DNA of 36,216 nt from Octopus bimaculoides (Eukaryota). Position numbers and translations under genes: made by a program. Every line of letters begins with the position of its first letter. Positions within the stretch are counted from its first letter, which is position 1. The DNA is taken from the NCBI RefSeq assembly GCF_001194135.2, contig NC_069000.1:284070-320285 (forward strand), in the 5' to 3' direction. Under the pieces are notes generated by a model. That model did not search any database. It worked only from the letters and a program-made list of their open reading frames with translations, and was not told the origin of the DNA. This document shows positions 1,448 to 35,648 of this stretch, one piece after another.

Positions 1448-1457
1448 NNNNNNNNNN
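1448..1457. other. Assembly gap (N run)
   Basis: 10 N between poly-A tracts. Confidence 1.
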
Positions 1458-9307: not shown

Positions 9308-9528
9308 GTAGCGAGCTGGCAGAATCGATAGCACACTGGTGAAATGCTTAGCGGTATTTCGTCTGTCGCTATGATCTTAGTTCAAATTACTCCGAGATCG
9401 ACTTTGCCTTTCATCCTTTCGGGGTCAATAAATTAAGTACCAGTTGCGTACTGGAGTCGAACTACCCGACTGCCCCTCCACCCAAATTTCAGGTCTTGTG
9501 CCTGTAGAAGAAAAGGATTATTATTGTT
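9308..9528 (+). mobile_element. tRNA-derived SINE (family 2)
   Basis: A-box-like TGGCAGAATCGATAG, B-box-like AGTTCAAATT, body cgactttgcctttcatcctttcggggtc, and an (ATT)n tail. Confidence 0.82.
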
Positions 9529-9963
9529 CAGACAGCAGTGTATTTTTAGAATGAAATTATCCAATGTCATTTCTTTTTCAACGTTTAGGATATTTTGAAG
9601 GCCATTGGACTGCTATTTCCAGGCTTCTAATGAAGATACCAGAACACAGTCGTATATTCGCGACTGGTTATCGTTGGGAGGTTGAGGGGGGCAGGCTATT
9701 AAATGGCCTTCCTCCTTCATTTGGATCGGAGTTATCCTTCATCACGTAAACCTTTTCATGAAAGACACTCCAGCTGTGGCAGTCCCGTCTTATTCACCGT
9801 GACAATGTCTTGGTGTTTAGAAAGACTTAGCTGCCATTTCTAGCAGGTCCAGTCTGCTTAGTCCAAGACATATGCTGGGTATTTCTTCCAAATTCCTTAA
9901 TGGCTATAACAAGTGAAGTCTCCACCCCAACATTTTCGTCTCCCCCCCCCTCGTTTCCGCTCT

Positions 9964-10518
9964 TGTTTAGCCCCAGGTCAGTTGTTCCAGCAGGCTTATG
10001 TTCTGATCAAAAAAACAACCTCTTCCTTTTGGCCATTATGACTTCCTTTTTCTAAAGGACTAAAGGGAATGTTTTGAGGGAGATTTAGCTGCTATTTCTC
10101 GCAGTTCGAGGTTTCTTCATTGACTCCTCTTAGTCGTGTAAAAAGAATTATTCAGCTTTGAACCCGAGATCAACTGCTTCGAGTCGGTGCTCCAACTATG
10201 ACCATCCTGTCTTTTTATATATTTGGTACCGGTTGATTTCATTCTTTTGCCTTTTATAAATAAGGACTTCAGGCAATTTGACTGCTATTTCTAGCAAGTC
10301 AAGTGACCGCATAGCTCATTCAGGGCTTGACTTTTTTCTTCATTCTTTACCCCAGGTCATCTCTGATCAAAAGCACTCCACCTATGACCATTCCGTCTGT
10401 TTTCTCCTTTTACCCGACACTGATTACCTCAGTCGTTTTAACTTTTTTCTTTTCTTTTTGGTGTGATTTTTGTAGGAATGTTGCTGCTATTTTTAGCAGT
10501 TCGTACGACCACGTAGAG
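9964..10518 (-). mobile_element. Three head-to-tail copies of a bipartite SINE-like repeat (family 4)
   Basis: Alternating motif A' (ccccaggtca..ctgatcaaa..ctatgaccat.c.gtct) and motif B (gagggagatttagctgctatttctagca..cgaccacgtagagg). Confidence 0.75.
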
Positions 10519-13241: not shown

Positions 13242-13419
13242 TCCTTTCCTTTCCTCTCCTGACTCTTCTGAGATTTTTCACCAATCCCCTAAAGCTTTCT
13301 CCCTAGAACCTTTTTCCTTGTGGTTGTTTGACCTGCATGAAATAACAGCCAAATCTCCATATCACCCTCAGCACCCTTTAAAAACAATCTAGTCCCGGCT
13401 CCACTATTCCTGCAAAGCT

Positions 13420-13790
13420 GACAGGGATGGTCATGGCTGGAATGCCTTCCAATTATGCCTTTGCCTCTCACTCTATGTGGTCATCTAGTTTGCTAGAAAA
13501 TGCAGTGAAATTTCCTCTCTAATCATGTCATCTTTCTACAGAAGAATGCAATTTCGATAAGATTGGCTTAGTGGGGATGGTCATGGCTAGAACACTTTGA
13601 TTAGGTTTAAACTATCATTCTCAGCCATGATAACCTTTCTCATGTTCCTGGAGCCTCTACGTGGTCTCTCTGTTTACTAGAAACAGCAGTCAAATGATGA
13701 TATATTGGATAATGTCTTTCGTTCGTCTGCATATAAGAAAAAGACAGGATGGTCATGGCAGGAATTCTTTTCATCAGAGTTGAAATCAAA
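13420..13790 (+). mobile_element. Head-to-tail family-4 cluster
   Basis: ggatggtcatgg occurs at about 13426, 13575 and 13747, alternating with the reverse complement of motif B at about 13472 and 13654. Confidence 0.75.
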
Positions 13791-16518
13791 CAGCAACAAC
13801 TGATTCAACATAGTTTCAAAAGTCACACCAGGCAGTGGGGGGGGTATAACTACAGTTTAGTGCCCCATGAACTTACACTGTTTCCTCATAACTTTCTGAA
13901 AAATGCAAAGCCATGTTTTTGAGGATGTAAGATTATGATTAATGCTAAAATTAAAATCTCTTCCATTGTAATTGAGGATCGTTGTCACTCTTCTGGGCTT
14001 TGTTTCCTCATAAAACTGTCTTTTAAAATACATTTCTAAATATCTTGCAGAAAGACATTTTTGAGGGAATAGATTACATAATGCTGTTATTTCAAATAAT
14101 ATTTAAATCAGAAGAATTTTGAAGTAAAAGAAGTTGGGGACAGCCCCAGGGGGGGGGGGATGAACCGATCACAATCTTCACCCTTGAAAATGTGTTTCTG
14201 CAAAACTTCAGTAAAAAAGAAAGAGAATCACGTGGAAACAGTCAGGGTGGCACCAATCTGTAGTTCTAGCACTTTGTGTGTGTGTCTGTGTGACTCACCT
14301 CACTCATCATCACTCAGCTCACTCATCATCACTCCTCCTACACATCATTTGATTCTTATCATCATTGTTTAACGTCTGCCTTCTATACTGGCATGGGTAG
14401 GGTATGTTTTTTTTTTCTTTTGGACAATGGATGTAGGATAACATGATAGATGTCCCTCAGATATGGTTTGGAGATTTAGTTGCTATTACTAGCATGCTGA
14501 CCAATCATGGATGGACGACTGCAGTGGTGAACTAAGACTGAATTATATTTACATGTTTCAGAGCTTCTTTGTAGAGTAAGCCTTTCACCATGCGTGACCA
14601 TGGCAACAGTTTGGTAAAGTGTGTGTAGGTGGGATTTGCCTTTTGGTTCTGATATTCTACAGAATTGGACCCTCTTGGCTGTGGAAGACTTCACCTTCAT
14701 CTTATTCATTTACCTCTAACGAGACATTCAATGATGGGGTTTTGCTTATGACGCTCGCACACTTCACTCTCTCTCTCCTCTGCTCTGAATAAACTAGGAG
14801 CTGTATTGTTGAGTCTTTTGCAATCACTAGAAATGCTGTACATAGGAAGGAGAAAGGCAGGATGCTCATGGGTGGAATGGCTTTGGTCAGCAGTTTATCA
14901 GACCTCGGCTGAACTGGGGCTAAACTCTTTCTCTTGTACATAAATTCCAACAGTTATTTTCGGCATTTTCCCACCACTTCCTCATATTTTTCGTTGGAAA
15001 CTTGAGACTCTGAGTAATGGCTGAAGTCTTTAGCTTAGAATAAATTTCATTTTGACTTTGCTTCTTTCTCCTATATTTGTACAATTAATTTTTGTATCTG
15101 TGCTAAATCAATTATTAATCTATTACATATGTATAATTGTATGAATAAATTATGCAAATATATGGTGTCATGATAGAATTTTCTTGGACTAATGGAAGAC
15201 ATTTTTGTCTTGGACTTATAAAAGACATTGAGTAGAAAGATTTTATCTCCTCCCCTTCCCTCCATTTCTAACTTTCTCTTCCCCCCCCCCCATTTCTAAC
15301 CTCCTACCCTCTCTATGAAGCTTTGTTATACTTCACCCTCACCCAAATAGTCTGTTAGTAGCTGCCATGTCAGTTTTGTTTGAAAGTGGGTGGGAGGCAA
15401 TGTTCAAAGACATTCAAACTAACCATTTTGCGTTTGTCTTTTATAAAATGGTAGAGTATCCTTTCGTTACTATATTTCTGTTAATTAATTTGGAGATTAA
15501 TGAAAAATTCAGTAAAATAACTTTGTACTTGGAATGAAATTTTGATGGAAGATTTTAATTTGGATCCCATTAAACAAGAAGTTTATAGAAGCAGTCTCAG
15601 AAGTGATAACCTGCTATTTCTGGGAGGCTGAAGCACCACGTAGAGAGTCTCTTGGAGCAGAAGGTTAGGTGTGGTACTTTGGATTATGTTACTCTGTGGA
15701 ATCAAAAGAATTGGAGGTGGGCGACGTCTGTGAATGAATGAGTCTCAAGAACTCTCTCGTTTAATGTTTAAGCTGGAAATATAGTTGGAACCTGATGGAA
15801 GAAACTTAATCTGAGAGGCATTATTATTTTTTTTGTCATTGTTGTGCCCTGTTTTTAAGAAATTTCAAGTTGGTGTGGACCAAGCAGATGTATATCAGGG
15901 AAGACCATCTTGTTTTTAGGGGCTACATTGTGTCCTGCTTGACATTTTAGATAGTTGGTGTGATTTGAGAGATTTAGCTGCTGTTTCTAGCTCTAAGCAG
16001 TCACATCTAAGAGACTAATCGTATTGATTCACGTTTCTTATTTGGTGTGTGTGTGTGTGTGTGTGTAAAGTGTTCTATTAACGCACCCCCTCCCCAAGTA
16101 GTTGATTTTTTTCCACAATTAGTTAATTATTGTGAGGGTGGATTATTTTTTTATGAAGGTGGATGTCAAAAATAAATATACAAACCAGAACCAGAGCTCA
16201 CTGTCCAAATGTTTCTGGTTTTGCTGACAGAACCAGTTTCTGTAGTCATAGTAGCAGTGGTGTTGGGAGGTGTTTTTTTGCTAATCTCAGGAGATGGAAG
16301 CGGCCAGAGAAAACACTCTTTTTTGGACATGTCTTTAAAAAAAAAAGAAAAGAAATTCAAATAATTGTGTGGGTATGTGGTTAAGAAGTTTGCTTTCCAA
16401 TAATCTGGTTTTGGGTTCTGGCAAGTGTATTCTAATATATGAACGTTGGGTTAAACCAATCCCTTGGGAGGGAATTTGGTAAATAGAAACTGGAAGCCTG
16501 TCAGGTGTGTTTCTATAT

Positions 16519-17379: not shown

Positions 17380-17703
17380 AGGCATGGCTGTGTGGTAAGA
17401 AGCCTGCTTCCCAGCCACATGGTTCCAGGTTCAGTCCCACAGCGTGGCACCTTGGGCAAGTGTCTTCTGCTATAACCTTGGGCCGACCAAAGCCTTGAGT
17501 GGATTTGGTAAATGGAAACCGAAAGAAACCTGTGGTGTACATTACATGTGTGTGTGTGTGTGTGTATAGATCTGTGTGTCTGTGTTTGCCCTCCACCATT
17601 GCTTAGCAACTGATGTTCACATCCCCGTAACTTAAAGGTTTGGCAAAAGTGAACAAGTCCCAGGTTTAAAAAAAATCAGTATTGGGGGTCAATTCATTCC
17701 ACT
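17380..17703 (+). mobile_element. tRNA-derived SINE with CORE-like central motif (family 1)
   Basis: Head GGCATGGCTGTGTGGTAAG with B-box-like GGTTCAGTCC; GGCACCTTGGGCAAGTGTCTT resembles the MIR/CORE motif; (TG)n linker and tail, truncated by the gap. Confidence 0.8.
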
Positions 17704-18495
17704 NNNNNNNNNNNNNNNNNNNNNNNNNNNNNNNNNNNNNNNNNNNNNNNNNNNNNNNNNNNNNNNNNNNNNNNNNNNNNNNNNNNNNNNNNNNNNNNNN
17801 NNNNNNNNNNNNNNNNNNNNNNNNNNNNNNNNNNNNNNNNNNNNNNNNNNNNNNNNNNNNNNNNNNNNNNNNNNNNNNNNNNNNNNNNNNNNNNNNNNNN
17901 NNNNNNNNNNNNNNNNNNNNNNNNNNNNNNNNNNNNNNNNNNNNNNNNNNNNNNNNNNNNNNNNNNNNNNNNNNNNNNNNNNNNNNNNNNNNNNNNNNNN
18001 NNNNNNNNNNNNNNNNNNNNNNNNNNNNNNNNNNNNNNNNNNNNNNNNNNNNNNNNNNNNNNNNNNNNNNNNNNNNNNNNNNNNNNNNNNNNNNNNNNNN
18101 NNNNNNNNNNNNNNNNNNNNNNNNNNNNNNNNNNNNNNNNNNNNNNNNNNNNNNNNNNNNNNNNNNNNNNNNNNNNNNNNNNNNNNNNNNNNNNNNNNNN
18201 NNNNNNNNNNNNNNNNNNNNNNNNNNNNNNNNNNNNNNNNNNNNNNNNNNNNNNNNNNNNNNNNNNNNNNNNNNNNNNNNNNNNNNNNNNNNNNNNNNNN
18301 NNNNNNNNNNNNNNNNNNNNNNNNNNNNNNNNNNNNNNNNNNNNNNNNNNNNNNNNNNNNNNNNNNNNNNNNNNNNNNNNNNNNNNNNNNNNNNNNNNNN
18401 NNNNNNNNNNNNNNNNNNNNNNNNNNNNNNNNNNNNNNNNNNNNNNNNNNNNNNNNNNNNNNNNNNNNNNNNNNNNNNNNNNNNNNNNNNNNNNN
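17704..18495. other. Assembly gap (N run) inside the presumptive first intron
   Basis: N run. Confidence 1.
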
Positions 18496-20739
18496 NTTTT
18501 TTTTTTTTTTTTGCATAATTGTATGAATTCCTTGTGTAGAATACAAATTTACAAAAATTGTTTTGAAAATTCCAAAAACTAAGAGTTACAAGTGATTGGC
18601 ATGTGTTAAAGCAGAATTTGTTTACAGTTGACAATATGAAGTCACGCATAAAATGATAGCTTTCTAATCCTGTTTTCTGACTGCGTAAAAACAATCAAAC
18701 TTTAAACCTTTTGTAACTTTTTATTAAAAAACTTTCTAGAAAAAGCAAATTATCTCCTGAGATTCAGCATGGAAAATTACATTAATACACCAAATTTTAA
18801 AATTTTCACAAAACTTTCAAATTTCTACAGTTGCGGCCAAAGAGAAAAGATCCAAGATCCAAGATCTTCGTCTGCAATGCTTATCACAAAATGAATTCTA
18901 TTGAGGTCATTCTGATTTTCAAGTGGTGCTCTTATCACTTTGCTTAATAATGAGTGCATTATTTTCTAAATTAACTGGAATGAAGACAGAAATCATCATC
19001 ATCATCAAATATGATGACTAACAAGTTTAAACTGACACTGTGTACCCTGGGGGTTGGATTTGAACTGCTGATGTGATTAACTACTGCAAGCTATTTTATC
19101 CTATGTGCCAGGAATTCTGCCATTCATCCTTATTTGGTCCCTAATTTCTCATTGGCAGCTGATCCGAAGTTCATTTGGAGAGAAGTTGATTCCAGAGTAA
19201 TTTCTACTCAAAATATTGAATTAAAATTAGATCTTCACCCGAAGGAATTATTCCACATCAGAATCATGCAAATGGCGCCTAAACCATCAGTCTGTAAAAT
19301 AAGGCAATGGTATTGAACCAACGTGTGTGTGTGTTTATTATTTATTAACATATTGACTCTCCCTAGATAACAATACGCACACACACACACACACACACAC
19401 CACCGCCGCTTCGCTATTTATCTGCGTTAACATATTTAATGAGTCATAGATTAAATATGTTAAGTGACCTCAGTTAATATTTAGGACAAAACAGAAATCT
19501 CAAATATAATTGTTTTTAAAAGAGGGGGGTGTGTGGAGAAAATGGTTTCCATCAGAATTTTAAGCATCGAGTTTAGGTGGTGGTGGTGGTTGTTCAGGCT
19601 GGACTTTGACTTATGATCAAAGACATTCCATTTGTGACATCCTGTTTTAATAGTAAAGAATGGCGTCTAATGTATTTTTTTTTCCATAATAATGAGATTT
19701 GAGGGGAAATTTGGTTGCCATTTTCATTACCAGTTTCAGCACCAATGTGGATAGTTCTTGGTTGGTTTCTATAGGGGTTAGTGATGGTATCAGCAGCATT
19801 GATAATAATGGTAAACAGACCAGTTGTATCCTTTTTTTATTTTTTGGTAAATTAAGAAGAAAAAAAAATACCAGAACACTTTAGTTCCAGATCAGCTCTA
19901 ATCCAGTCGACCCCTAGAAAATACTATTCCAGTTGTGATTATTGAGTCCTTTACATTCTCCAATGTACAAATACATATTTTTAAAGAATATAGTGTGACC
20001 TGAGGGAGGTTTGGTTGCTGTTTCTAGCAGATTGAGCAAGGCTCTGATAGGTCTCACTCATTGAAGGTAATCACAAGAGCTTCACAATTAATGTGGTCCT
20101 GAAATGGTTTTAAAGAGTGGAAGCAAATAAGCCTGAAGGGAAAATCCAGTCCCTGCAAACTGTATTTAAATAATGTCTCTCCTTGCGATATTGAAAACAG
20201 GATCTTCTCATAGAATGTGTTTTGTTGACAAAAAAGCACACGGATATAGTGGAATGTTATATTAATAGAATAGAATGAAGACAGCTTCCTTGTACTCTTC
20301 TTATCTCCCAACACATCCATCGTGATTGTGTTGATTAGGCTAATTTCTGGACTGAGTAGCACATTGCATCGTTGAGCAAGGCATTTCATTTTATGTGACT
20401 CCAGAATCTGCTTGGCTAAAGAGTACCTATTGGTTGTTGGTGCAGCCCTTGGGGGCCATTGGATCCTCTCTAATTGTCCAATGCATATTAGCTAGGAGGA
20501 TGAGAGTTAAAAGGTGATGATGATATGCAAGATGGAAGAGTGCTCTAAAGATATCATATAGTCTGAATAAAAAGAGAAAGTAGAGGGAGCTGTTGGCTTT
20601 GAGGGTGACAAAGGGTTTGATCTGAGTGGAAAAACCGTTTTATGAAGCCTGGTATCATTTGATCGTCTGGCATTAACATAGAATCCTAAAAGATATGAAC
20701 AAAGTGAAAAGAAATGAAGCAGTGATGCTCAACACAATT

Positions 20740-21336: not shown

Positions 21337-21723
21337 TTTCACTATACAGTCATGAAAGAAACAGATGCAAAAATTCTGAGAGAAAATGTGTGGGTGTGAA
21401 AAACTGTTGAAAGAGAAATTTAAAAAGAAATTCTTTGAGGAGGAGGATTAGGGTATCATGTGTTGCAGTTCTTGTCTATTTTGATGCTGTCAGACAAGAA
21501 AGAACTGCTTGTTAAGTGTGAGAATGAAATTTGGTGCCAGCCAAATATATATTCTTACAGAGATAGTCTTGTATATCTATAAATGAAATTTCTTTTCCTT
21601 CCAAGTAATTCTAAACAACTTTCATTTAAGAAAGCCTACCAATCTGTGATGATTGATGTTTTAAATTTATTTATTTTATTGAAAATTGTCTCTTAGCAAT
21701 ATGAAACGTTTTTCTTAAGTTGT

Positions 21724-22040
21724 GGCCGATGATAGCACCGCCTGACTGGCATCTGTGCTAGTGGAACGTTAAGAGCACCATCTGAGTGTAATCGTTGCCA
21801 GTGCTGCTGGACTGGCTCCTGTGCAGGTGGCACATAAAAAACACCATTTGAGCATGGCTATTGCCAGTACCGCCTGACTGGCCATCGTGCTGGTGGCACG
21901 TAAAAGCCCCCACTACACTCTCGGAGTGGTTGGTGTTAGGAAGGTCATCCAGCTGTAGAAACTCTGCCAGATCAGATTGGAGCCTGGTGCAGCCTTCTGG
22001 TTCACCAGTCCTCAGTCAAATCGTCTGACACAGGGCATCT
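21724..22040 (+). mobile_element. SINE-like repeat with internal tandem subunits and RTE-type 3' tail
   Basis: Three diverged subunits (accgcctgactggc..gtgctggtggcacgtaaaag-like), followed by gttaggaaggtcatccagctgtagaaac. The same tail motif recurs near 28845 and 29745. Confidence 0.65.
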
Positions 22041-22607: not shown

Positions 22608-22733
22608 GCCTTTTAAATTCCAAGATGACTACCACTTCTCCCCGGCCATTTTTGGATGAAATCAAAACTACCAAGAAGGACGACCTGCAGCACATCGATG
22701 TCCAAGAGAAGACGGCTCTTCCGACGAAAACTG
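22608..22733 (+). CDS. Beta-thymosin first coding exon (17 nt leader, ATG at 22625, repeat 1 core)
   Basis: Acceptor tttttag at 22607; caagATG has A at -3; reads MTTTSPRPFLDEIKTTKKDDLQHIDVQEKTALPTKT; donor CTG|GTGAGA at 22734. Confidence 0.92.
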
Positions 22734-25700
22734 GTGAGAATTGAAACTGTTTCCTTTTTCCTTTTAAGGGCCTGAAAAGTGGAATAGCTGTGGGGAGGTG
22801 GTGGGAGGGAAATTAATGATTTTCTTTAACTCTTTCACTTGTTTCAGTCATTGGATTGCAGCCATGCTGGGGCAGTGCCTTGGAACGGATTCAACCAAAC
22901 AAATTGACCCCATTTTTCTCTTTCTTTTGTAAGCCTGGTCCTTCTTTTGCTGTCCTTTGAATTCCTGACTGACAGATGTCCTTGTTTGGTTGGGACCTCT
23001 GCTACTGCATGATGGGAAAATGAAATCTGGTCCTTAGAGTTAAGTTGTATTACTTTGCCTCGGATGCTATAAACGGTGTCCTTCCTTGATTGAAGAGTAG
23101 AAAGAGACATCTGGCAATAGTTACACTTGCGTTTTGGAGTGGAGGGGTCTGACAGTAGTCACACTCACGTTTTGGAGGGATGGCAGGACATTGATTTTAT
23201 TAATCCCTTGAATGGTACTTTTTTTTTTTTTAATCCCTAAGGTCGTCAACTTCCTTAAAGCTGATCTCATCAGATGTTGCAGTTATGATCCTGCCTTTTA
23301 TTTCTCTCTCGTGTGTGTAAGATTGTGGTCTTCAATTTTCTCAAGGCTGTAGGAGTGTATTTTGAGGGAGATTTGGGTGCTATTTGAGTAACCACCTTAA
23401 GGGCTCCCTATTTAGCTCCTAGTTATTGTTTTGGTCCCAGATTAACCCTCATCAAACAACCCTATTCTCTATCAAGGGCCACATAATCACAATGTGAACT
23501 TCCTTTTTATGACAACAATAATTTGAGGGAGAGATAGCTGACTCTTTCTAGAAGGAAGCCATGTTATAAAGAGGCTCCTTTGTCACCCCAGAACTGCTTG
23601 AGCATTTGTTTGATGTATAAACTATTTATAGAAATAATTATGCAATGAATCGTTTGTTTTAAAGAGGAGACATTAAAACCTTGAAGACAAACAAAACACG
23701 CATTTTGTTTGCATCCATCAGCTTCACTGTTGTCATGGTGACAAGCACATTGGTCGGATTTATAACCGGATACTTTTTCACTGGTTTGTGTACACACACA
23801 CACACACCCGTTGACAATTACGTAGCTACACTACTTTTGCAAAACTGACCGAGTAATCCATTAATTTTATTTTTTCTCTATGTAAAAATGGATTCCAAAG
23901 CCACAGGAAACCCAGTCTTGAGTGCTTCTCTGCTTTATTCTCAGAAAGAAAAGAAAATTCTTGATTCAGATTTATTAAAGTTTTCACCTGATCGAAATAA
24001 GTCACACCTTCCTCAAATCAAATAACATTGGAGCTATTAGATGATGTAGTTCTAGATATTCCTAAAAATGATGGGAAGGTCATGGTTGGGTTGCTTTGAT
24101 CCAAGGCTTACTCAATCAAGGTTGACCTGTGGCTCATCATGTTTCTTTTAAATCCCACCCCTATATAAAAGGGAGTCTCCATAACCCTTTAAGTTGTGAA
24201 ATATCATTTGAAGACTTCATCTTTATTCGTTTCTAAGTCTATCGGGAGTTAACTATACTGATAAGACAATCCAGCCATGACTTTCACTTCTATATAAGTC
24301 TACATTATCCAATGGTACTTTTTTTTTTTTTAAGATAGCAGGATATGATTTAAATGGAGATTTGCTGCTGCTGCTATTTCTAGTATTTTGAATGACCCCC
24401 AGGCTGCATTGGCCGTGTTAACCAACCACAATCATTCATTTATTTTACCAACTGTGAACTTAATGTTGGTGACTGGTGTGAGTTGGAAGTTTTGACTGCT
24501 ATTTTTAGCAAGTATGGATGACCATGTAGAGATTCTCATTCAAGGAATCTGAGTTAACTTGGTCCAGTAGATAATCCCCTTAATTCAAGCAAACCCTAAC
24601 TGATAATCAGTCCTGCAATGCCCTAGCCCTCACTACACTCAACCAAGTAGCACTAACTTTGGCTGAGGAACTTGGCTAACCCTGACAGGTCTATTTCTTT
24701 CAACCAAATGCCTTTTGTAAATTCTTTTCTAAAATTTTGGGGGAAAAAATACAGGATTTCAATTTAAGAAATAATCTGTAGAAAGATATGACTGGAAAAT
24801 AAGCTTATCTGACTAGACTAGTTGGTCATGGGCAGAAAGACTTAACCATGTGCTGAGACATGCTTCATGCAATTGGGTGGACAAACGAATAACTGAACAG
24901 ATTTGTGTTTTTAATTGTGCTTATGAGTGATGAGTGACTTCCATTGGCAGCTTTTGCCTCCCTTCCATTATTCTTTAATCTTTTGGTTCCTTCAGTCACT
25001 GCCACCAGCAGTCCTTCCTCAAATGTCTTTGTTTTTCTATTTTTTGTTTTTATTGTTTTTTTTTCCTTAGATATTGTCAAAGAGAAAAGTGAGCAAGAGT
25101 TACGCAGCTCCATTGGTAGTTTTGATAAGACAAAACTTAACCCAACTGAAACCCAAGAGAAAATAAACTTACCTGACAAGACAGGTTGGTCATGGGCAGA
25201 AAGTCTTAACCATATGCTGAGGCATGCATCATGCGATTGGGTGGACAAACGAATAACTGAATAGATTTGTGTTTTTAATTGTGCTTAAAATTTTGCTCAA
25301 TAACCCTCAGCGTTTCTTACTAACAACCTTAGCTTTCAGTTGATATTTTTTTTTAATTACTAAACTTGTGTGTTTTTAGTTACTAACCACTCAAGAGCCT
25401 TTTAAGTATGTAACAGCAACTGGCTGCCACCATTTCAGACATGCATCAGCAAATGTTTTGTTTGCTGAAGTTATAAACAAGAGCCCTGAGCTCTTGTTAG
25501 TCATTAGTTTGGGGTCTCCTTTGCCTGAGAAGACAACAATGTTGAAACAGAGGTGTTTCAGGGTCCCATATGTGTTATGGACACATTCAGATCTTCCAGA
25601 ATGTATTAAAAATGTGAAAGTAATCATTTTGATGCTCATAAGAAAGCTAATCTTTTTTTCTCCTGTATGTATTTATGTCTACAAGTTGACATTTTCTCTT

Positions 25701-26134: not shown

Positions 26135-26175
<41 letters not shown>

Positions 26176-27738: not shown

Positions 27739-30241
27739 ACAAATAGGACAAATAGGACAAAGGAACTTATATTTTGAAAGCTATTAAAATATTTTAATGA
27801 ATTCAAATAAACTGTATGGAATATAGAAAAAAAGTGTTTCTGAGTTTGTAAATAGACTTTTCACACCTCCGAAGTGACTTAGTTTTTGTTTTTCTTTTCT
27901 AATTTTAATTTTTTCTTTAAATTTAGAAATTGACCAAGAGAAGACAGAACAAGAACTCCGAAGCAATATTACCGAATTTGATAAGAACCAACTAAAACAT
28001 GCGAACGTGGAGGAGAAGAATCCACTTCCAGACAAAGACAGTAAGTGATTGCTTACGGTTATCGTCATCAACATCAACATACTGTCCTTTGACCAAACGT
28101 GTTTTTCAAAGAAGTCTGGATATGAGTAACATCATCTGATCCCAGGATCTCATAACAAGGAGGCACACATTCCTTCAACCATTCACTGTTTATGACCATT
28201 ATCATTTTCTGTTTTTCCATGCTTGAATGGATCAGACGGGATTCAGTGAGACAGGACGCCTTTCCTGTTGCCAACCTTTGTTTCCATATCTAGTGCCAGA
28301 TATGCAAAATAATGGGGAGTGAATGTCATGGATGGAGAATCTTTGATCTAAAGTTTGCTCTTTTCAAGACTGACAAGAAGTGGAACCACGTACATCCACA
28401 TCCTCATCATCATCCTCATCATCATCATCGTCGTTTAACACCCTCCTCCTATTGGTTGGGCAGTTTGACGGAAGCTGGCCAGGCTGGAGCCTGCATTAGA
28501 CTTGTCTGTTTTGGCAGGGTTTTTTATGGAGGGGTGCCTGCCCTTCCTAACATGAACCACTCCACAGAATGGACTGAGTGCTTTTTACATGGCACAAGCA
28601 CAAGTGGGGTCAGTTTGGCAGCACATAGACAGATTTTCTGGACATTGGTTAAGCTTGCTTTACAACCATGTGGCTTTGGGTTGGCACCTTAAGCAAGTCC
28701 TCTCTGTAGCCCTGAACCAACTAATACCATTTTAAAGAGGCATCACCTTCATAGAAGTGCAGTTTTGTTTGTTTGCAATCTATTGTGGAAACCTATCTGG
28801 TCATGGCAGAAACATGTTACCTTTCTTGGAAACGGTGAGGGTTGGTGATAGGAAGGGCACCCAGCTGTTGAAAAGTAGATGTCAGAATGACTACGATGAT
28901 AAAATGGCACTTTACTGTTTTTTTAAATTGAAATCTGTTTATATTAGAAACTGATATTTCTGGTATGTACTTCAGTTTGTGTGTGTACTTGGAGCTACAT
29001 TTAATATTCTGAAATTTTTCTTTAGCAATTAAACAAGAAAAAACTGAGCAAGAACTGAAGGCTTCCATCAACAAGTTTGACAAAGCTGATTTAAAATGCA
29101 CAAAGACTTGTGAGAAAGGAGTATTGCCAACCAAGGCTGGTGAGTTTTTTGGGTTCAATTTCTGTTATGCATTGTTTGTTTGACAAGTGAAATTTGTTTA
29201 GCATTTTTGGAGCTGACAGCCGTGTATAGGGCCTTTTTTTTTTTTTTTTTTTTTTTTTTAGTTGGGCACAAACTGATTTATATAATCAGTGCCGATACAT
29301 TTCTCTTATTCAACAAAGGAAAAAAAAATCGTCATTAATCAAGGTCACGTGTTGTGAGAAAGGTTAGTCAATAAGAGCGAGGGGAGACAACTCCGAAGCT
29401 CTATGTAAGCAAATGGATCGATGAGGGAAATATATTTAGAACTGGAATAAGGTGTAAGCATGGCTGTACGGTTTCCCAAGGGTCACTTTCCAACCGCATG
29501 ATTACAGGCTCAATCCCACCGTGAGCAAAAGTTCTCTGCTATAACCCTGGGCCGACCAAACCCTTTGGAGTGGATTTGGTTGGCAAAAACTGAAAGAAGA
29601 CTATCACGTGTTTGTGTTTTTTTTTTCTGCATTTGTTTGTATAAAAGTGTTCTTTGTTGTTGTCAACAAATTGTTTTTGCTCTTTGTCCCTTTGAAGCTG
29701 TGTGAAATGTGATCCCTTACTCAAATAAGGTAAGGGTTAGTGTCAGGAAAGGCATCTGGCTGTAAAATGAACAAGTTTGGATGTGTGGGAGTTCTTGTTA
29801 ACTACTTAATGTTCTGACCAGTGAGAAGGGACTCCCAGCCTCAAGTGCAAACAGTGAAGGAATCAGGAAGAGGGGTCGGGTAGGGTTTGTTTAGCCAAAG
29901 TGAAACTGGAACCTGATGGTAAAAATTATTTTGGCTTAAAGTAATAAAGCAATGAAAGAGTTTGTGGCCAGTGGTGATTCTGTTTGGGGAAAAGCAAGAC
30001 AAGAAAGCCCCAGGATGGCAGATAACCATAGAAAAATAGTTATTTCTTGCTAGGGGGTGGGTGGGGATGGAAAGACTAAAAAGGATAAAACTTGGATTTA
30101 AAATTTTTTTTTTTAAAGACAAAAAAGGTGTGTTTTTACCTGGCGTCAATATATTGTTTTACCTGTGGAATTTCTTTTATTTTCTATAAACCTTTTTTTT
30201 TTCTTTTTTCAGATATTGCTGAAGAAAAAGGTACTGCTTAA
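22625..30241 (+). CDS. Four-repeat beta-thymosin/WH2 actin-binding protein (tetrathymosin/ciboulot/Csp24-like), 159 aa; join(22625..22733,25071..25184,27927..28040,29026..29139,30213..30241)
   Basis: Manual splicing gives 480 nt (159 aa plus TAA) with no internal stop. All four introns are GT-AG with polypyrimidine tracts. There are four copies of the beta-thymosin pattern (I..FDK..L....T/V.EK..LP.K..I..EK). Confidence 0.95.
24795..24923 (+). repeat. 129-bp direct-repeat copy of 25159-25287 (exon-2 3' end plus donor), inactivated
   Basis: Ungapped alignment with 118/129 identity. CAG|GT has become CTA|GT, and AAG has become an in-frame TAG. Confidence 0.93.
25071..25184 (+). CDS. Beta-thymosin internal exon, repeat 2 (114 nt, phase 1-1)
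   Basis: Long T-rich tract ending ttccttag; reads (D)IVKEKSEQELRSSIGSFDKTKLNPTETQEKINLPDKT; donor CAG|GTTGGT. Confidence 0.93.
25717..25985. mobile_element. hAT (Charlie-like) MITE in the intron after exon 2
   Basis: Perfect 14-bp TIR CAGTGGTTCCCAAA / TTTGGGAACCACTG. The flanks aaattagg / agttagag are a degenerate 8-bp TSD with a TA core. Confidence 0.8.
26472..26536 (+). CDS. Candidate alternative terminal exon of the beta-thymosin gene
   Basis: TACTAAC at 26404-26410, T/G-rich tract and ctag acceptor at 26471. A second in-frame acceptor (cccctccttgcag) lies at 26513. The phase-1 reading is ERQTLWSRKCPLLAEICTPTH* or EICTPTH*. An AT-rich stretch follows, with AATAAA at 26849-26854. No transcript evidence. 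Confidence 0.4.
27657..27738. repeat. Imperfect (CT)n microsatellite
   Basis: Directly visible; it explains the RERE run in ORF 27315..27806. Confidence 0.95.
27927..28040 (+). CDS. Beta-thymosin internal exon, repeat 3 (114 nt, phase 1-1)
   Basis: Acceptor atttag; reads (E)IDQEKTEQELRSNITEFDKNQLKHANVEEKNPLPDKD; donor ACA|GTAAGT. Confidence 0.95.
28403..28690 (-). mobile_element. Minus-strand copy of the RTE-tailed repeat
   Basis: (CAT)n tail, cgtttaac, gcccttcctaac and gagtgctttttacatggcac are the reverse complement of 21724-22040 motifs. Confidence 0.6.
29026..29139 (+). CDS. Beta-thymosin internal exon, repeat 4 (114 nt, phase 1-1)
   Basis: Acceptor tttttctttag; reads (T)IKQEKTEQELKASINKFDKADLKCTKTCEKGVLPTKA; donor CTG|GTGAGT. 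Confidence 0.95.
29457..29775 (+). mobile_element. Degraded family-1 SINE in the intron after the repeat-4 exon
   Basis: gcatggctgt head and ctataaccctgggccgaccaaa...gagtggatttggt shared with the 17380 copy. Confidence 0.7.
30213..30241 (+). CDS. Beta-thymosin terminal coding exon
   Basis: Strong acceptor (T-rich tract ending cag); reads (D)IAEEKGTA-TAA, which completes the C-terminal helix of the last repeat. Confidence 0.9.
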
Positions 30242-31066: not shown

Positions 31067-31290
31067 CACCTTGAGTTCTGTTGGTCCGTAGTTTCTTCCA
31101 GAGAGTGGAATCGAACGCCAGTATTTAACTGGTACTTCGACACTTCGGCAGGATTTGAACTCAGAAAGTTAAGAATCAGAACTTTGACTTCAAATTCCGT
31201 CAAAGTCAAGTTGCCCAAGCATTCTTTTGAGGTGGATGAAATAAGTACCCCTCCCCCACCCCTCAAAATCGATAGTCTTTTTCCTAAATC
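31064..31290. mobile_element. Head-to-head family-2 SINE fragments
   Basis: Minus fragment ending cggcaggatttgaactcagaa (31146-31166), followed 16 nt later by a plus fragment tttgacttcaaattccgtcaaagtc...gaaataagtacc. Confidence 0.55.
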
Positions 31291-31307: not shown

Positions 31308-31508
31308 TCTTTTCACTATAGGCATAAAGACTGAAAGTTTGGGGCAGGGGTGGGGTTAGTCGAGTTCACTGGTATTTATTTTATTGATCCCCCCCAAAGG
31401 AAGAAAGACAAAGTCGATATCGACGGAATTTGAACTCAGACTGTGAAGACACGAAATGCCAACAGATATTTTGTCCTGTGTGTTCTAACGATTCTACCAG
31501 CGAACTGG
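31308..31508 (-). mobile_element. Degraded family-2 SINE
   Basis: caaagtcgatatcgacggaatttgaactcag and ctaacgattctaccagc match family 2 in reverse. Confidence 0.7.
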
Positions 31509-32524: not shown

Positions 32525-32717
32525 ATATATGTGCACTCTACTGCAAGGAAGTAAGAGGTGCTGGAATTCCACATAAATTCATCGTCAGGGAACCAGCTTA
32601 CAAAAAGCAAGACATGTGCTAAATGCTAAGGTTGCTTTTTGTATGTTGGTTCCCTGAAGATGAATTTACGTGCAATTCCAGCCCCTCTTACTTCTTTGGA
32701 GTCGAGTGCACATATAT
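32525..32717. mobile_element. Fold-back (palindromic) element, probably a MITE
   Basis: 86-bp inverted arms (32525-32610 and 32632-32717) with 9 mismatches and a 21-nt spacer; ATATAT at both ends. Confidence 0.8.
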
Positions 32718-33295: not shown

Positions 33296-33507
33296 NNNNN
33301 NNNNNNNNNNNNNNNNNNNNNNNNNNNNNNNNNNNNNNNNNNNNNNNNNNNNNNNNNNNNNNNNNNNNNNNNNNNNNNNNNNNNNNNNNNNNNNNNNNNN
33401 NNNNNNNNNNNNNNNNNNNNNNNNNNNNNNNNNNNNNNNNNNNNNNNNNNNNNNNNNNNNNNNNNNNNNNNNNNNNNNNNNNNNNNNNNNNNNNNNNNNN
33501 NNNNNNN
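33296..33507. other. Assembly gap (N run)
   Basis: N run. Confidence 1.
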
Positions 33508-33611: not shown

Positions 33612-33833
33612 AATAATAATAGTATCAAATTTTGCCACCAGGGCAAGAATTGGCGGGGAGGGGACTAGTCGATTACATTGACCCCAGTGTTTCACTGAAA
33701 CTTAATTTATCAACCCCGAAAGGATGAAAGGTAACATTGACGCCGGCGGAATTTGAACTCAGAACGTAGCGACGGGCGAAATACCGCTAAGCATTTCGTC
33801 CGGCATAGCTAACGATGCTGCCACCTCGTCGCC
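33612..33833 (-). mobile_element. Family-2 SINE
   Basis: Reverse complement closely matches 9308-9528 (ccccgaaaggatgaaagg, ggaatttgaactcagaacgta, ataccgctaagcatttc). Confidence 0.85.
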
Positions 33834-34954: not shown

Positions 34955-35648
34955 NNNNNNNNNNNNNNNNNNNNNNNNNNNNNNNNNNNNNNNNNNNNNN
35001 NNNNNNNNNNNNNNNNNNNNNNNNNNNNNNNNNNNNNNNNNNNNNNNNNNNNNNNNNNNNNNNNNNNNNNNNNNNNNNNNNNNNNNNNNNNNNNNNNNNN
35101 NNNNNNNNNNNNNNNNNNNNNNNNNNNNNNNNNNNNNNNNNNNNNNNNNNNNNNNNNNNNNNNNNNNNNNNNNNNNNNNNNNNNNNNNNNNNNNNNNNNN
35201 NNNNNNNNNNNNNNNNNNNNNNNNNNNNNNNNNNNNNNNNNNNNNNNNNNNNNNNNNNNNNNNNNNNNNNNNNNNNNNNNNNNNNNNNNNNNNNNNNNNN
35301 NNNNNNNNNNNNNNNNNNNNNNNNNNNNNNNNNNNNNNNNNNNNNNNNNNNNNNNNNNNNNNNNNNNNNNNNNNNNNNNNNNNNNNNNNNNNNNNNNNNN
35401 NNNNNNNNNNNNNNNNNNNNNNNNNNNNNNNNNNNNNNNNNNNNNNNNNNNNNNNNNNNNNNNNNNNNNNNNNNNNNNNNNNNNNNNNNNNNNNNNNNNN
35501 NNNNNNNNNNNNNNNNNNNNNNNNNNNNNNNNNNNNNNNNNNNNNNNNNNNNNNNNNNNNNNNNNNNNNNNNNNNNNNNNNNNNNNNNNNNNNNNNNNNN
35601 NNNNNNNNNNNNNNNNNNNNNNNNNNNNNNNNNNNNNNNNNNNNNNNN
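34955..35648. other. Assembly gap (N run) flanked by (TA)n
   Basis: N run. Confidence 1.

What the first reader, a model, noticed from the sequence alone, without database searches (positions are those of the whole stretch)
25178..25260. Exon-2 splice donor appears to be supplied by a retroposon copy (one A>T change creates the GT)
Seen: the exon-2/intron junction AAGACAG|GTTGGTCATGG matches the dispersed family-4 motif AAGACAGGATGGTCATGG at 13741-13758 at 17/18 positions, and the minus copy at 10196-10213 at 16/18. The single difference from the 13741 copy turns GA into the GT of the donor. Weaker similarity continues (gaa.gtctt; tggg...aaac). AAGACAG is also genuine thymosin coding sequence (Lys-Thr-Glu). 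Inference: a repeat copy landed at the exon end through microhomology, replaced the ancestral donor and was exapted as a weak donor (GTTGGT). That could make repeat 2 the most often skipped or read-through cassette.
Basis: partly seen in the sequence, partly recalled or inferred. Interest (0 to 1): 0.7.

Follow-up and report, generated by a model that had tools for sequence, protein, structure and literature searches.

The report
Thymosin exon-2 donor resembles a repeat
The start of the intron after exon 2 of a four-repeat beta-thymosin gene really does resemble the core of a common local repeat, but only over about 18-44 bases and at borderline significance, so "a repeat supplied the splice site" remains unproven and the site looks like an ordinary donor.

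Summary
25178-25195 (AAGACAG|GTTGGTCATGG) matches 13741-13758 at 17/18 and 10196-10213(-) at 16/18. The one difference from 13741 is the T of the donor GT, and AAGACAG is coding sequence.

- A profile of 17 family copies aligns to only 25176-25219 (5-8 bits, window E 0.31-0.045). The weakest true copy scores 24-27 bits.
- With the core fixed, the next bases follow the family in register (P <0.003-0.055, depending on the test).
- The 91%-identical upstream duplicate gives only P 0.03-0.49, and pairwise tests find nothing.
- There is no target-site duplication and no tail. The family is not shown to be a retroposon.
- An isolated 17/18 pair is expected by chance in a window of this size. Only its position is unusual.

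New facts:
- A 129-nt block (the last 26 nt of exon 2 plus the first 103 nt of the intron) is duplicated 364 bp upstream at 24795-24923, and that copy already carries GTTGGTCATGG.
- The exon ends at the same phase-1 position as exons 1, 3 and 4.
- By U1 pairing energy the donor (-8.0 kcal/mol) is not the weakest of the four.
- No orthologous sequence could be retrieved.

Best reading: an ordinary donor with a short chance or coding-driven resemblance (~0.5). Repeat-derived origin: ~0.35.

The parts
25071..25184 (+). Exon 2 of a four-repeat beta-thymosin gene (114 nt, phase 1-1; encodes DIVKEKSEQELRSSIGSFDKTKLNPTETQEKINLPDKT plus the G of the next codon)
   Evidence: The spliced CDS of 480 nt translates without stops. 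Pfam PF01290 matches four times, E 4e-35.
25182..25190 (+). Exon-2 5' splice site CAG|GTTGGT
   Evidence: It has 7/9 matches to MAG|GTRAGT. The U1 duplex energy is -8.0 kcal/mol.
25176..25219 (+). Stretch that aligns in register to the family-4 profile.
   Evidence: nhmmer gives 5.4-8.2 bits, E 0.31-0.045.
25159..25287 (+). Block X: last 26 nt of exon 2 plus first 103 nt of intron 2. This is the downstream copy of a local direct duplication.
   Evidence: the repeat finder family D14. blastn 91.5% over 129 nt, E 2e-44.
24795..24923 (+). Block X': the upstream copy in intron 1, 364 bp away. It carries GTTGGTCATGG but has CTA|GT in place of CAG|GT and an in-frame TAG.
   Evidence: The U1 duplex of its pseudo-donor is -2.6 kcal/mol.
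13683..13834 (+). Family-4 copy that contains the 17/18 partner (13741-13758)
10118..10281 (-). Family-4 copy that contains the 16/18 partner (10196-10213). It sits in a roughly 200-bp-period array at 9600-10500.
14815..14956 (+). Family-4 copy with the 15/18 partner (14854-14871)
28286..28395 (+). Family-4 copy in intron 3, same orientation as the gene, 246 nt downstream of the exon-3 donor
   Evidence: It was not a seed sequence. nhmmer found it at E 0.0035, rising to 5e-10 on iteration.
22625..22733 (+). Exon 1 (coding part; donor CTG|GTGAGA)
27927..28040 (+). Exon 3 (114 nt; donor ACA|GTAAGT; also ends ...GACAAAGACA)
29026..29139 (+). Exon 4 (114 nt; donor CTG|GTGAGT)
30213..30241 (+). Exon 5 coding part (DIAEEKGTA, then stop)

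Best explanation
The site is the ordinary 5' splice site of the second repeat exon of a four-repeat beta-thymosin gene. It lies at the same phase-1 position as the donors of the other repeat exons.

Seven of the 18 matching bases (AAGACAG) are present because they encode Lys-Thr-(Glu). The paralogous exon 3 also ends in AAGACA.

The remaining match (GTTGGTCATGG against the family core GATGGTCATGG, plus a few bases more) is a short resemblance to the best-conserved core of a repeat that fills about a tenth of this window. It is most likely coincidence.

The firmly shown structural event is different: a 129-nt block spanning the exon end and the intron start was copied 364 bp upstream. That copy already carries GTTGGTCATGG and has since lost its splice-site context.

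Shown: the gene model, the phase, the duplication, the short extent of the family match, and the donor's mid-range U1 complementarity. Inferred: that the resemblance is coincidental.
For: - Exons 2, 3 and 4 are each 114 nt and phase 1-1. The boundaries fall at the homologous repeat position.
- Exon 3 ends GACAAAGACA|GT and exon 2 ends GACAAGACAG|GT.
- The family profile aligns to only 36-44 of about 160-190 model positions, at 5.4-8.2 bits and window E 0.31-0.045. There is a gap of more than 15 bits to the weakest real copy.
- The 100 nt beyond the core show no pairwise similarity to any copy (P 0.86).
- The tail of the 91%-identical duplicate is at or near chance (P 0.03-0.49).
- Isolated 17/18 pairs occur at the chance rate in this window.
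- There is no target-site duplication, A-rich tail or second donor remnant.
- The family consensus has GA, so a repeat origin would need a non-functional intermediate. None of the 17 copies has T.
- U1 pairing is -8.0 kcal/mol, within the range of the other three donors.
Against: - With the 14-mer core fixed, the junction's next bases follow the family profile in register better than shuffles do: P 0.055 and P <0.003 to 0.017 across gap settings.
- In leave-one-out trials 13 of 14 true copies pass the same test, and the junction scores at the bottom of their range.
- The profile score rises on iteration without the junction ever being included (5.4 to 8.2 bits). It is the top non-member hit in the window.
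- Corrected only for the eight intron ends of this gene and about six families, the profile hit has P of roughly 0.003-0.02 (my arithmetic).
- The family is dense here (17 copies in 36 kb). One same-strand copy sits 246 nt downstream of the paralogous exon-3 donor.
Confidence: 0.5

Rival explanations
1. Repeat-derived donor without retroposition. A family-4 copy already sat in the intron in gene orientation. It was joined to the exon end through the shared 8-mer AAGACAGG, either by a slippage or microhomology-mediated deletion, or at the breakpoint of the duplication that made the exon-2 cassette. That removed the old donor. An A>T change, or a rare T-bearing copy, then gave CAG|GT at the ancestral boundary.
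For: - The in-register similarity starts inside the exon end and runs to about +35 (25176-25219).
- Anchored tail tests for the junction give P <0.003-0.055.
- Three family copies carry AAGACAGG or a close variant immediately 5' of the core.
- A same-orientation copy lies 246 nt downstream of the exon-3 donor, so resident copies near donors do occur in this gene.
- This mechanism predicts no target-site duplication and no tail, as observed.
- Exon 2 is a symmetric 114-nt cassette, so a transient loss of its donor could be tolerated as in-frame skipping.
Against: - Profile support is borderline (E 0.045-0.31), and the score is more than 15 bits below every accepted copy.
- The duplicate's tail is not convincingly family-like.
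- Beyond about +35 the alignment is gappy, with 35 of 66 columns matching.
- It needs two rare events, one of which destroys a donor.
- No family copy has T at the critical position.
Confidence: 0.25
2. A 5'-truncated retroposon copy inserted exactly at the exon end with microhomology, displaced the ancestral donor, and was exapted after an A>T change as a weak donor that favours skipping of repeat 2.
For: The same similarity data as above. 5' truncation with junctional microhomology is a known feature of LINE-mediated insertions (general knowledge).
Against: - No target-site duplication abuts the fragment, there is no A-rich or simple-repeat tail, and no displaced ancestral donor lies downstream. 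The only candidate, CCTGAGAAGACA at 25524, is followed by ACAATG rather than G|GT, and the 340 nt in between are not family-like.
- The family shows no tRNA, 5S or 7SL head.
- It occurs partly in tandem arrays of roughly 150-260 bp period, so its retroposon nature is unproven.
- Eight bases of microhomology is long for a retroposition junction.
- The donor is not weak relative to its neighbours.
Confidence: 0.1
3. The resemblance reflects a shared short functional motif (for example a protein- or RNA-binding site containing TGGTCATGG) that is selected both in the repeat and at this intron start, not common descent.
For: GGTCATGG is the most conserved part of an otherwise 60-70% identical family. 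It is also unchanged between the two copies of the 129-nt block.
Against: No such motif is known to me. The other three donors of the gene lack it. The region has no unusual RNA structure (z -0.19). Conservation between the duplicates is simply 91% overall.
Confidence: 0.05

Closest known systems
Transposable-element-derived 5' splice sites, as in Alu exonization, where a single point change creates a GT/GC donor inside a repeat (Sorek, Lev-Maor, Ast and colleagues; cited from my own knowledge)
   Same: The proposal is the same in kind: a repeat sequence one substitution away from a donor (CAG|GA to CAG|GT) becomes the splice site.
   Different: In those cases the whole new exon lies inside the element, the element aligns over its full length, and the exon is usually new and alternatively spliced. 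Here the exon is an old coding repeat, the boundary is at the ancestral position, only 35 or fewer intron bases resemble the element, and the alignment is borderline.
Multi-repeat beta-thymosin / WH2 proteins (Drosophila Ciboulot, C. elegans tetrathymosin, molluscan Csp24; from my own knowledge)
   Same: There are four PF01290 repeats in one polypeptide, and each internal repeat is encoded by its own symmetric 114-nt exon.
   Different: Nothing unusual was seen. Orthology to a named gene was not established. The closest database protein is a 3-repeat transcript at 60% identity.
Microhomology-mediated deletion or replication slippage, and short local segmental duplication
   Same: A sharp-edged 129-nt direct duplicate lies 364 bp away. 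An 8-nt identity between the exon end and the repeat could serve as a breakpoint.
   Different: No breakpoint signature could be demonstrated, and the sequences flanking the duplicate are unrelated.
Octopus SINEs (OK, OR1, OR2 of Ohshima and Okada 1994, as cited in PMC4824008)
   Same: A short, abundant, dispersed, old repeat that is dense in introns.
   Different: Family 4 has no detectable tRNA-like head. No tails or target-site duplications were seen. It is partly arranged in tandem arrays. No published consensus was available for comparison.

Membership tests
TE-derived (exapted) splice donor | The intron start, including the GT, aligns significantly to the element consensus well beyond the splice site | tested here: inconclusive
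   nhmmer aligns 36-44 nt at 5.4-8.2 bits, E 0.31-0.045. Anchored tail tests give P <0.003-0.055 for the junction but 0.03-0.49 for its 91% duplicate. Pairwise alignment gives P 0.86.
TE-derived (exapted) splice donor | Insertion hallmarks: target-site duplication, element tail, displaced ancestral donor | tested here: not met
   None is adjacent to the fragment. The 11/12 repeat of the exon end at 25524 is not followed by a donor, and the 340 nt in between are not family-like.
TE-derived (exapted) splice donor | Relatives without the element have a different intron start (an empty or ancestral state) | not testable with these tools
   No cephalopod genomic sequence was reachable.
TE-derived (exapted) splice donor | The donor is actually used, and its strength or skipping differs from neighbouring exons | tested here: inconclusive
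   No transcript data from this species were available. The in-frame gene model requires this donor. Its U1 duplex of -8.0 kcal/mol is mid-range among the four donors.
SINE / retroposon (for 'family 4') | Pol III-type head derived from tRNA, 5S or 7SL | tested here: not met
   ARAGORN found 0 genes. Rfam found no relevant hit at either the gathering or the E<=1 threshold.
SINE / retroposon (for 'family 4') | 3' A-rich or simple-repeat tail and flanking target-site duplications | tested here: inconclusive
   The copies are only 60-78% alike and their ends are undefined. An internal A-rich linker is present. Some copies form tandem arrays of roughly 150-260 bp period.
SINE / retroposon (for 'family 4') | Many dispersed copies in both orientations | tested here: met
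   There are 17 copies on both strands across 36 kb.
Beta-thymosin repeat protein gene | Thymosin/WH2 repeats (PF01290) above the curated threshold | tested here: met
   Four stretches, 119.7 bits against a cut-off of 24.8.

The most novel reading that the evidence does not exclude
The first ~35 bases of intron 2, including the donor GT, descend from a copy of the local repeat family. That copy was fused to the exon end through the shared 8-mer AAGACAGG and was then converted from GA to GT. A repeat would then supply the working donor of an old, conserved coding exon at exactly its ancestral boundary in a cephalopod. The later 129-nt duplication would date the event.
Probability: 0.35. Interest if true: 0.45.

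Novelty: not a real feature. Interest (0 to 1): 0.2.

Why it matters
If it were real, this would be a clean case of a repeat replacing the donor of a conserved coding exon without moving the exon boundary. That is rarer than repeat-derived new exons. It would also be an example of how the very repeat-rich cephalopod genomes remodel splice sites, and it would suggest a handle on regulated inclusion of one actin-binding repeat.

As the evidence stands it is an ordinary splice site. Its interest lies mainly in showing how a coding-constrained 7-mer next to a short conserved repeat core can mimic an exaptation.

Tried and rejected
- Orthologue retrieval failed.
  - A protein search with the spliced protein returned only a 3-repeat metatranscriptome sequence and an unrelated exon.
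  - The exon-plus-read-through ORF had no relatives and is not on record.
  - The protein and DNA scans of metagenome contigs were both empty.
- Literature searches for an octopus thymosin gene, an octopus SINE consensus, or the motif strings gave nothing usable.
- A simple 364-bp tandem duplication was rejected. The sequence between and outside the two 129-nt blocks is unrelated.
- A whole-exon pseudo-copy upstream was rejected. There is no similarity 5' of 24795.
- A target-site duplication using CCTGAGAAGACA at 25524 was rejected. No donor follows it, the intervening 340 nt are not family-like, and the window expectation for such a 12-mer is 0.19.
- A 'cassette inserted into a resident repeat' model was not supported. 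It predicts the 5' half of a plus-strand family copy upstream of the exon. The nearby copies are minus-strand or complete.
- RNA structure hiding the donor was rejected (z -0.19). No inverted repeat involves the donor.
- Homology of the intron-2 start to the paralogous intron-3 start is 7/11, but it is explained by splice consensus positions and is not informative.

Full report
**What is at the coordinates**

The window carries, on the plus strand, a five-exon gene for a four-repeat beta-thymosin.

| Exon | Coordinates | Donor |
|---|---|---|
| 1 (coding part) | 22625-22733 | CTG\|GTGAGA |
| 2 | 25071-25184 | CAG\|GTTGGT |
| 3 | 27927-28040 | ACA\|GTAAGT |
| 4 | 29026-29139 | CTG\|GTGAGT |
| 5 | 30213-30241 | none (ends DIAEEKGTA, stop) |

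- The spliced 480-nt CDS is open.
- Pfam Thymosin (PF01290) matches four times, 119.7 bits.
- Exons 2, 3 and 4 are each 114 nt and phase 1-1. The exon-2 boundary therefore lies at the same repeat position as the others.

**The observation**

- 25178-25195 is AAGACAG|GTTGGTCATGG.
- It matches 13741-13758 at 17/18, 10196-10213(-) at 16/18 and 14854-14871 at 15/18.
- The one difference from 13741 is the T of the donor GT. None of the 17 family copies has T there.
- AAGACAG is coding (Lys-Thr plus the G of Glu). Paralogous exon 3 ends in GACAAAGACA, so these seven bases need no repeat to explain them.

**The repeat family**

- 'Family 4' is an old, degenerate element. Its layout is: CTACGTGGTCGCTCGAC-TGCTAGAAATAGCAGTCAAATCTCC...; an A-rich linker; CATTGGATAATGTAG...; then AAGACAGGATGGTCATGGCTGGAATGCTTTTGATCAG-GTTGACCTGGGGCTAAAC.
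- There are 17 recognisable copies on both strands, about a tenth of the window. Copies are 60-78% alike.
- Some copies form arrays of roughly 150-260 bp period (9600-10500 minus strand; 13300-13850 plus strand).
- No tRNA-like or other pol III head was found. I could not define tails or target-site duplications, so 'retroposon' is unproven.
- GGTCATGG is the best-conserved part of the family.

**Does the junction belong to the family?**

| Test | Result |
|---|---|
| nhmmer profile of 14 copies, junction excluded | 25174-25209 only, 5.4 bits, window E 0.31 |
| Three iterations, 17 members, junction never included | 25176-25219, 7.4-8.2 bits, E 0.08-0.045. Top non-member hit, but more than 15 bits below the weakest member |
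| Pairwise local alignment of the 100 nt after the core against every copy | At chance (P 0.86). Six of 14 true copies also fail, so power is low |
| Core fixed, tail shuffled, nhmmer | P 0.055 |
| Anchored profile alignment of the tail | Junction P <0.003-0.017 across gap settings. 13 of 14 true copies pass leave-one-out, and the junction scores at the bottom of their range |
| Same anchored test on the upstream duplicate (6 differences in 103 nt) | P 0.03-0.49 |

- Past about +35 the alignment is gappy, with 35 of 66 columns matching.
- The similarity is therefore real over about 18-44 nt. It continues in register a little further than chance alone would predict, but it is fragile.

**How surprising is it?**

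- In composition-matched random windows an all-against-all scan gives about 3 runs of 17/18 matches. The real window has four isolated pairs, this one among them.
- Only the location is unusual: a donor on one side and a family core on the other.
- I scaled the profile E-value to the eight intron ends of this gene and about six families. That gives P of roughly 0.003-0.02. This is my arithmetic, not a tool output.
- That has to be weighed against a low prior for a repeat replacing a donor while leaving the exon boundary untouched.
- I put repeat descent at about one third.

**New structural fact**

- A 129-nt block at 25159-25287 (the last 26 nt of exon 2 plus the first 103 nt of intron 2) is duplicated at 24795-24923 in intron 1, 364 bp upstream. 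Identity is 91.5% and both ends are sharp.
- Both copies carry GTTGGTCATGG, so the T predates this duplication.
- The upstream copy has CTA|GT, an in-frame TAG and a dead U1 match (-2.6 kcal/mol).
- The flanks are unrelated. It is therefore neither a simple tandem duplication nor a whole pseudo-exon.

**Insertion hallmarks**

- None was found: no target-site duplication abutting the fragment, no tail and no displaced donor.
- CCTGAGAAGACA at 25524-25535 repeats the exon end at 11/12. The window expectation for such a match is 0.19 and the local P is 0.02. It is followed by ACAATG, and the 340 nt in between are not family-like.
- If the fragment does derive from the repeat, fusion of a resident intronic copy to the exon end through the shared AAGACAGG fits better than retroposition. 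The fusion could be a slippage deletion or a duplication breakpoint.
- A same-strand copy does sit 246 nt downstream of the paralogous exon-3 donor, at 28286-28395.

**Donor strength**

- CAG|GTTGGT matches the MAG|GTRAGT consensus at 7/9, the same as exons 1 and 3. Exon 4 has 8/9.
- U1 5'-end duplex energies are -8.1, -8.0, -6.4 and -9.2 kcal/mol for exons 1 to 4.
- The +3 U and +4 G are uncommon (my own knowledge), but by these crude measures exon 2 is not the weakest donor.
- There is no local RNA structure (z -0.19) and no inverted repeat at the donor.
- Skipping of exon 2 would be in frame.
- The only related transcript found (P0001, 60% identity, from another species) has three repeats and lacks an exon-2-type repeat. 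This is compatible with exon 2 being either a cassette or a lineage-specific addition, but it proves neither.

**Comparison with other species**

This could not be done. None of the searchable collections held cephalopod genomic DNA for this locus.

**Verdict**

- The exaptation story is neither shown nor excluded.
- The most likely reading (~0.5) is an ordinary ancestral donor with a short, partly coding-driven resemblance to an abundant repeat core.
- Repeat descent by any mechanism is ~0.35, with microhomology fusion (~0.25) more likely than retroposition (~0.1).
- Even if true it would be a new instance of a known phenomenon. Interest is low.

Noticed in passing
window 24795-24923 vs 25159-25287: Within the 129-nt duplicate, the 26 exon-derived bases differ at 5 positions (including -1, -2 and -7 of the donor, and creating an in-frame TAG). 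The 103 intron-derived bases differ at only 6 (Fisher P 0.044). This could reflect selection against a decoy donor in intron 1, or it could be chance.
   Followed up: partly
window 25524-25535: CCTGAGAAGACA repeats the exon-2 end (CCTGACAAGACA) at 11/12, 352 bp downstream on the same strand. With the upstream copy this gives three exon-end-like motifs spaced 364 and 352 bp apart. No further similarity surrounds it.
   Followed up: partly
window 23792-23807 and 26139-26171: (AC)8 in intron 1 and (TG)16 in intron 2 flank exon 2 and are complementary. In the pre-mRNA they could pair and loop out exon 2.
   Followed up: no
window 9600-10500 (minus) and 13300-13850 (plus): Family-4 units stand head to tail with periods of roughly 150-260 bp. 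That is a satellite-like arrangement, unusual for a SINE.
   Followed up: partly
window 24012-24176 (+) and 24183-24359 (-): Two family-4 copies in intron 1 abut tail to tail as an inverted pair, about 700 bp upstream of exon 2.
   Followed up: no
L001 108-473 (protein P0001): The closest database relative is a three-repeat beta-thymosin transcript from a marine metatranscriptome. Its internal repeats best match exons 3 and 4 of this gene, so its architecture equals this gene with exon 2 skipped.
   Followed up: partly
window 1448-1457, 17704-18496, 33296-33507, 34955-35648: Runs of N (assembly gaps). They produce spurious long ORFs and 'perfect' inverted repeats in the mechanical lists.
   Followed up: yes
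window 17448-17496 / 29517-29565; 795-825 / 31142-31172 / 31417-31447 / 33740-33770; 9341-9471 vs 33667-33797: At least two other dispersed repeat families are present. One (CACCTTGGGCAAGTGTCTTCTGCTATAACC...) has a copy in intron 4. Another carries a GGATTTGAACTC box reminiscent of a tRNA T-arm.
   Followed up: no
window 21723-21904 and 32525-32717: There is a 66-nt unit repeated three times in tandem about 700 bp upstream of exon 1. There is also an 86-nt, 90% complementary hairpin-forming inverted repeat downstream of the gene.
   Followed up: no
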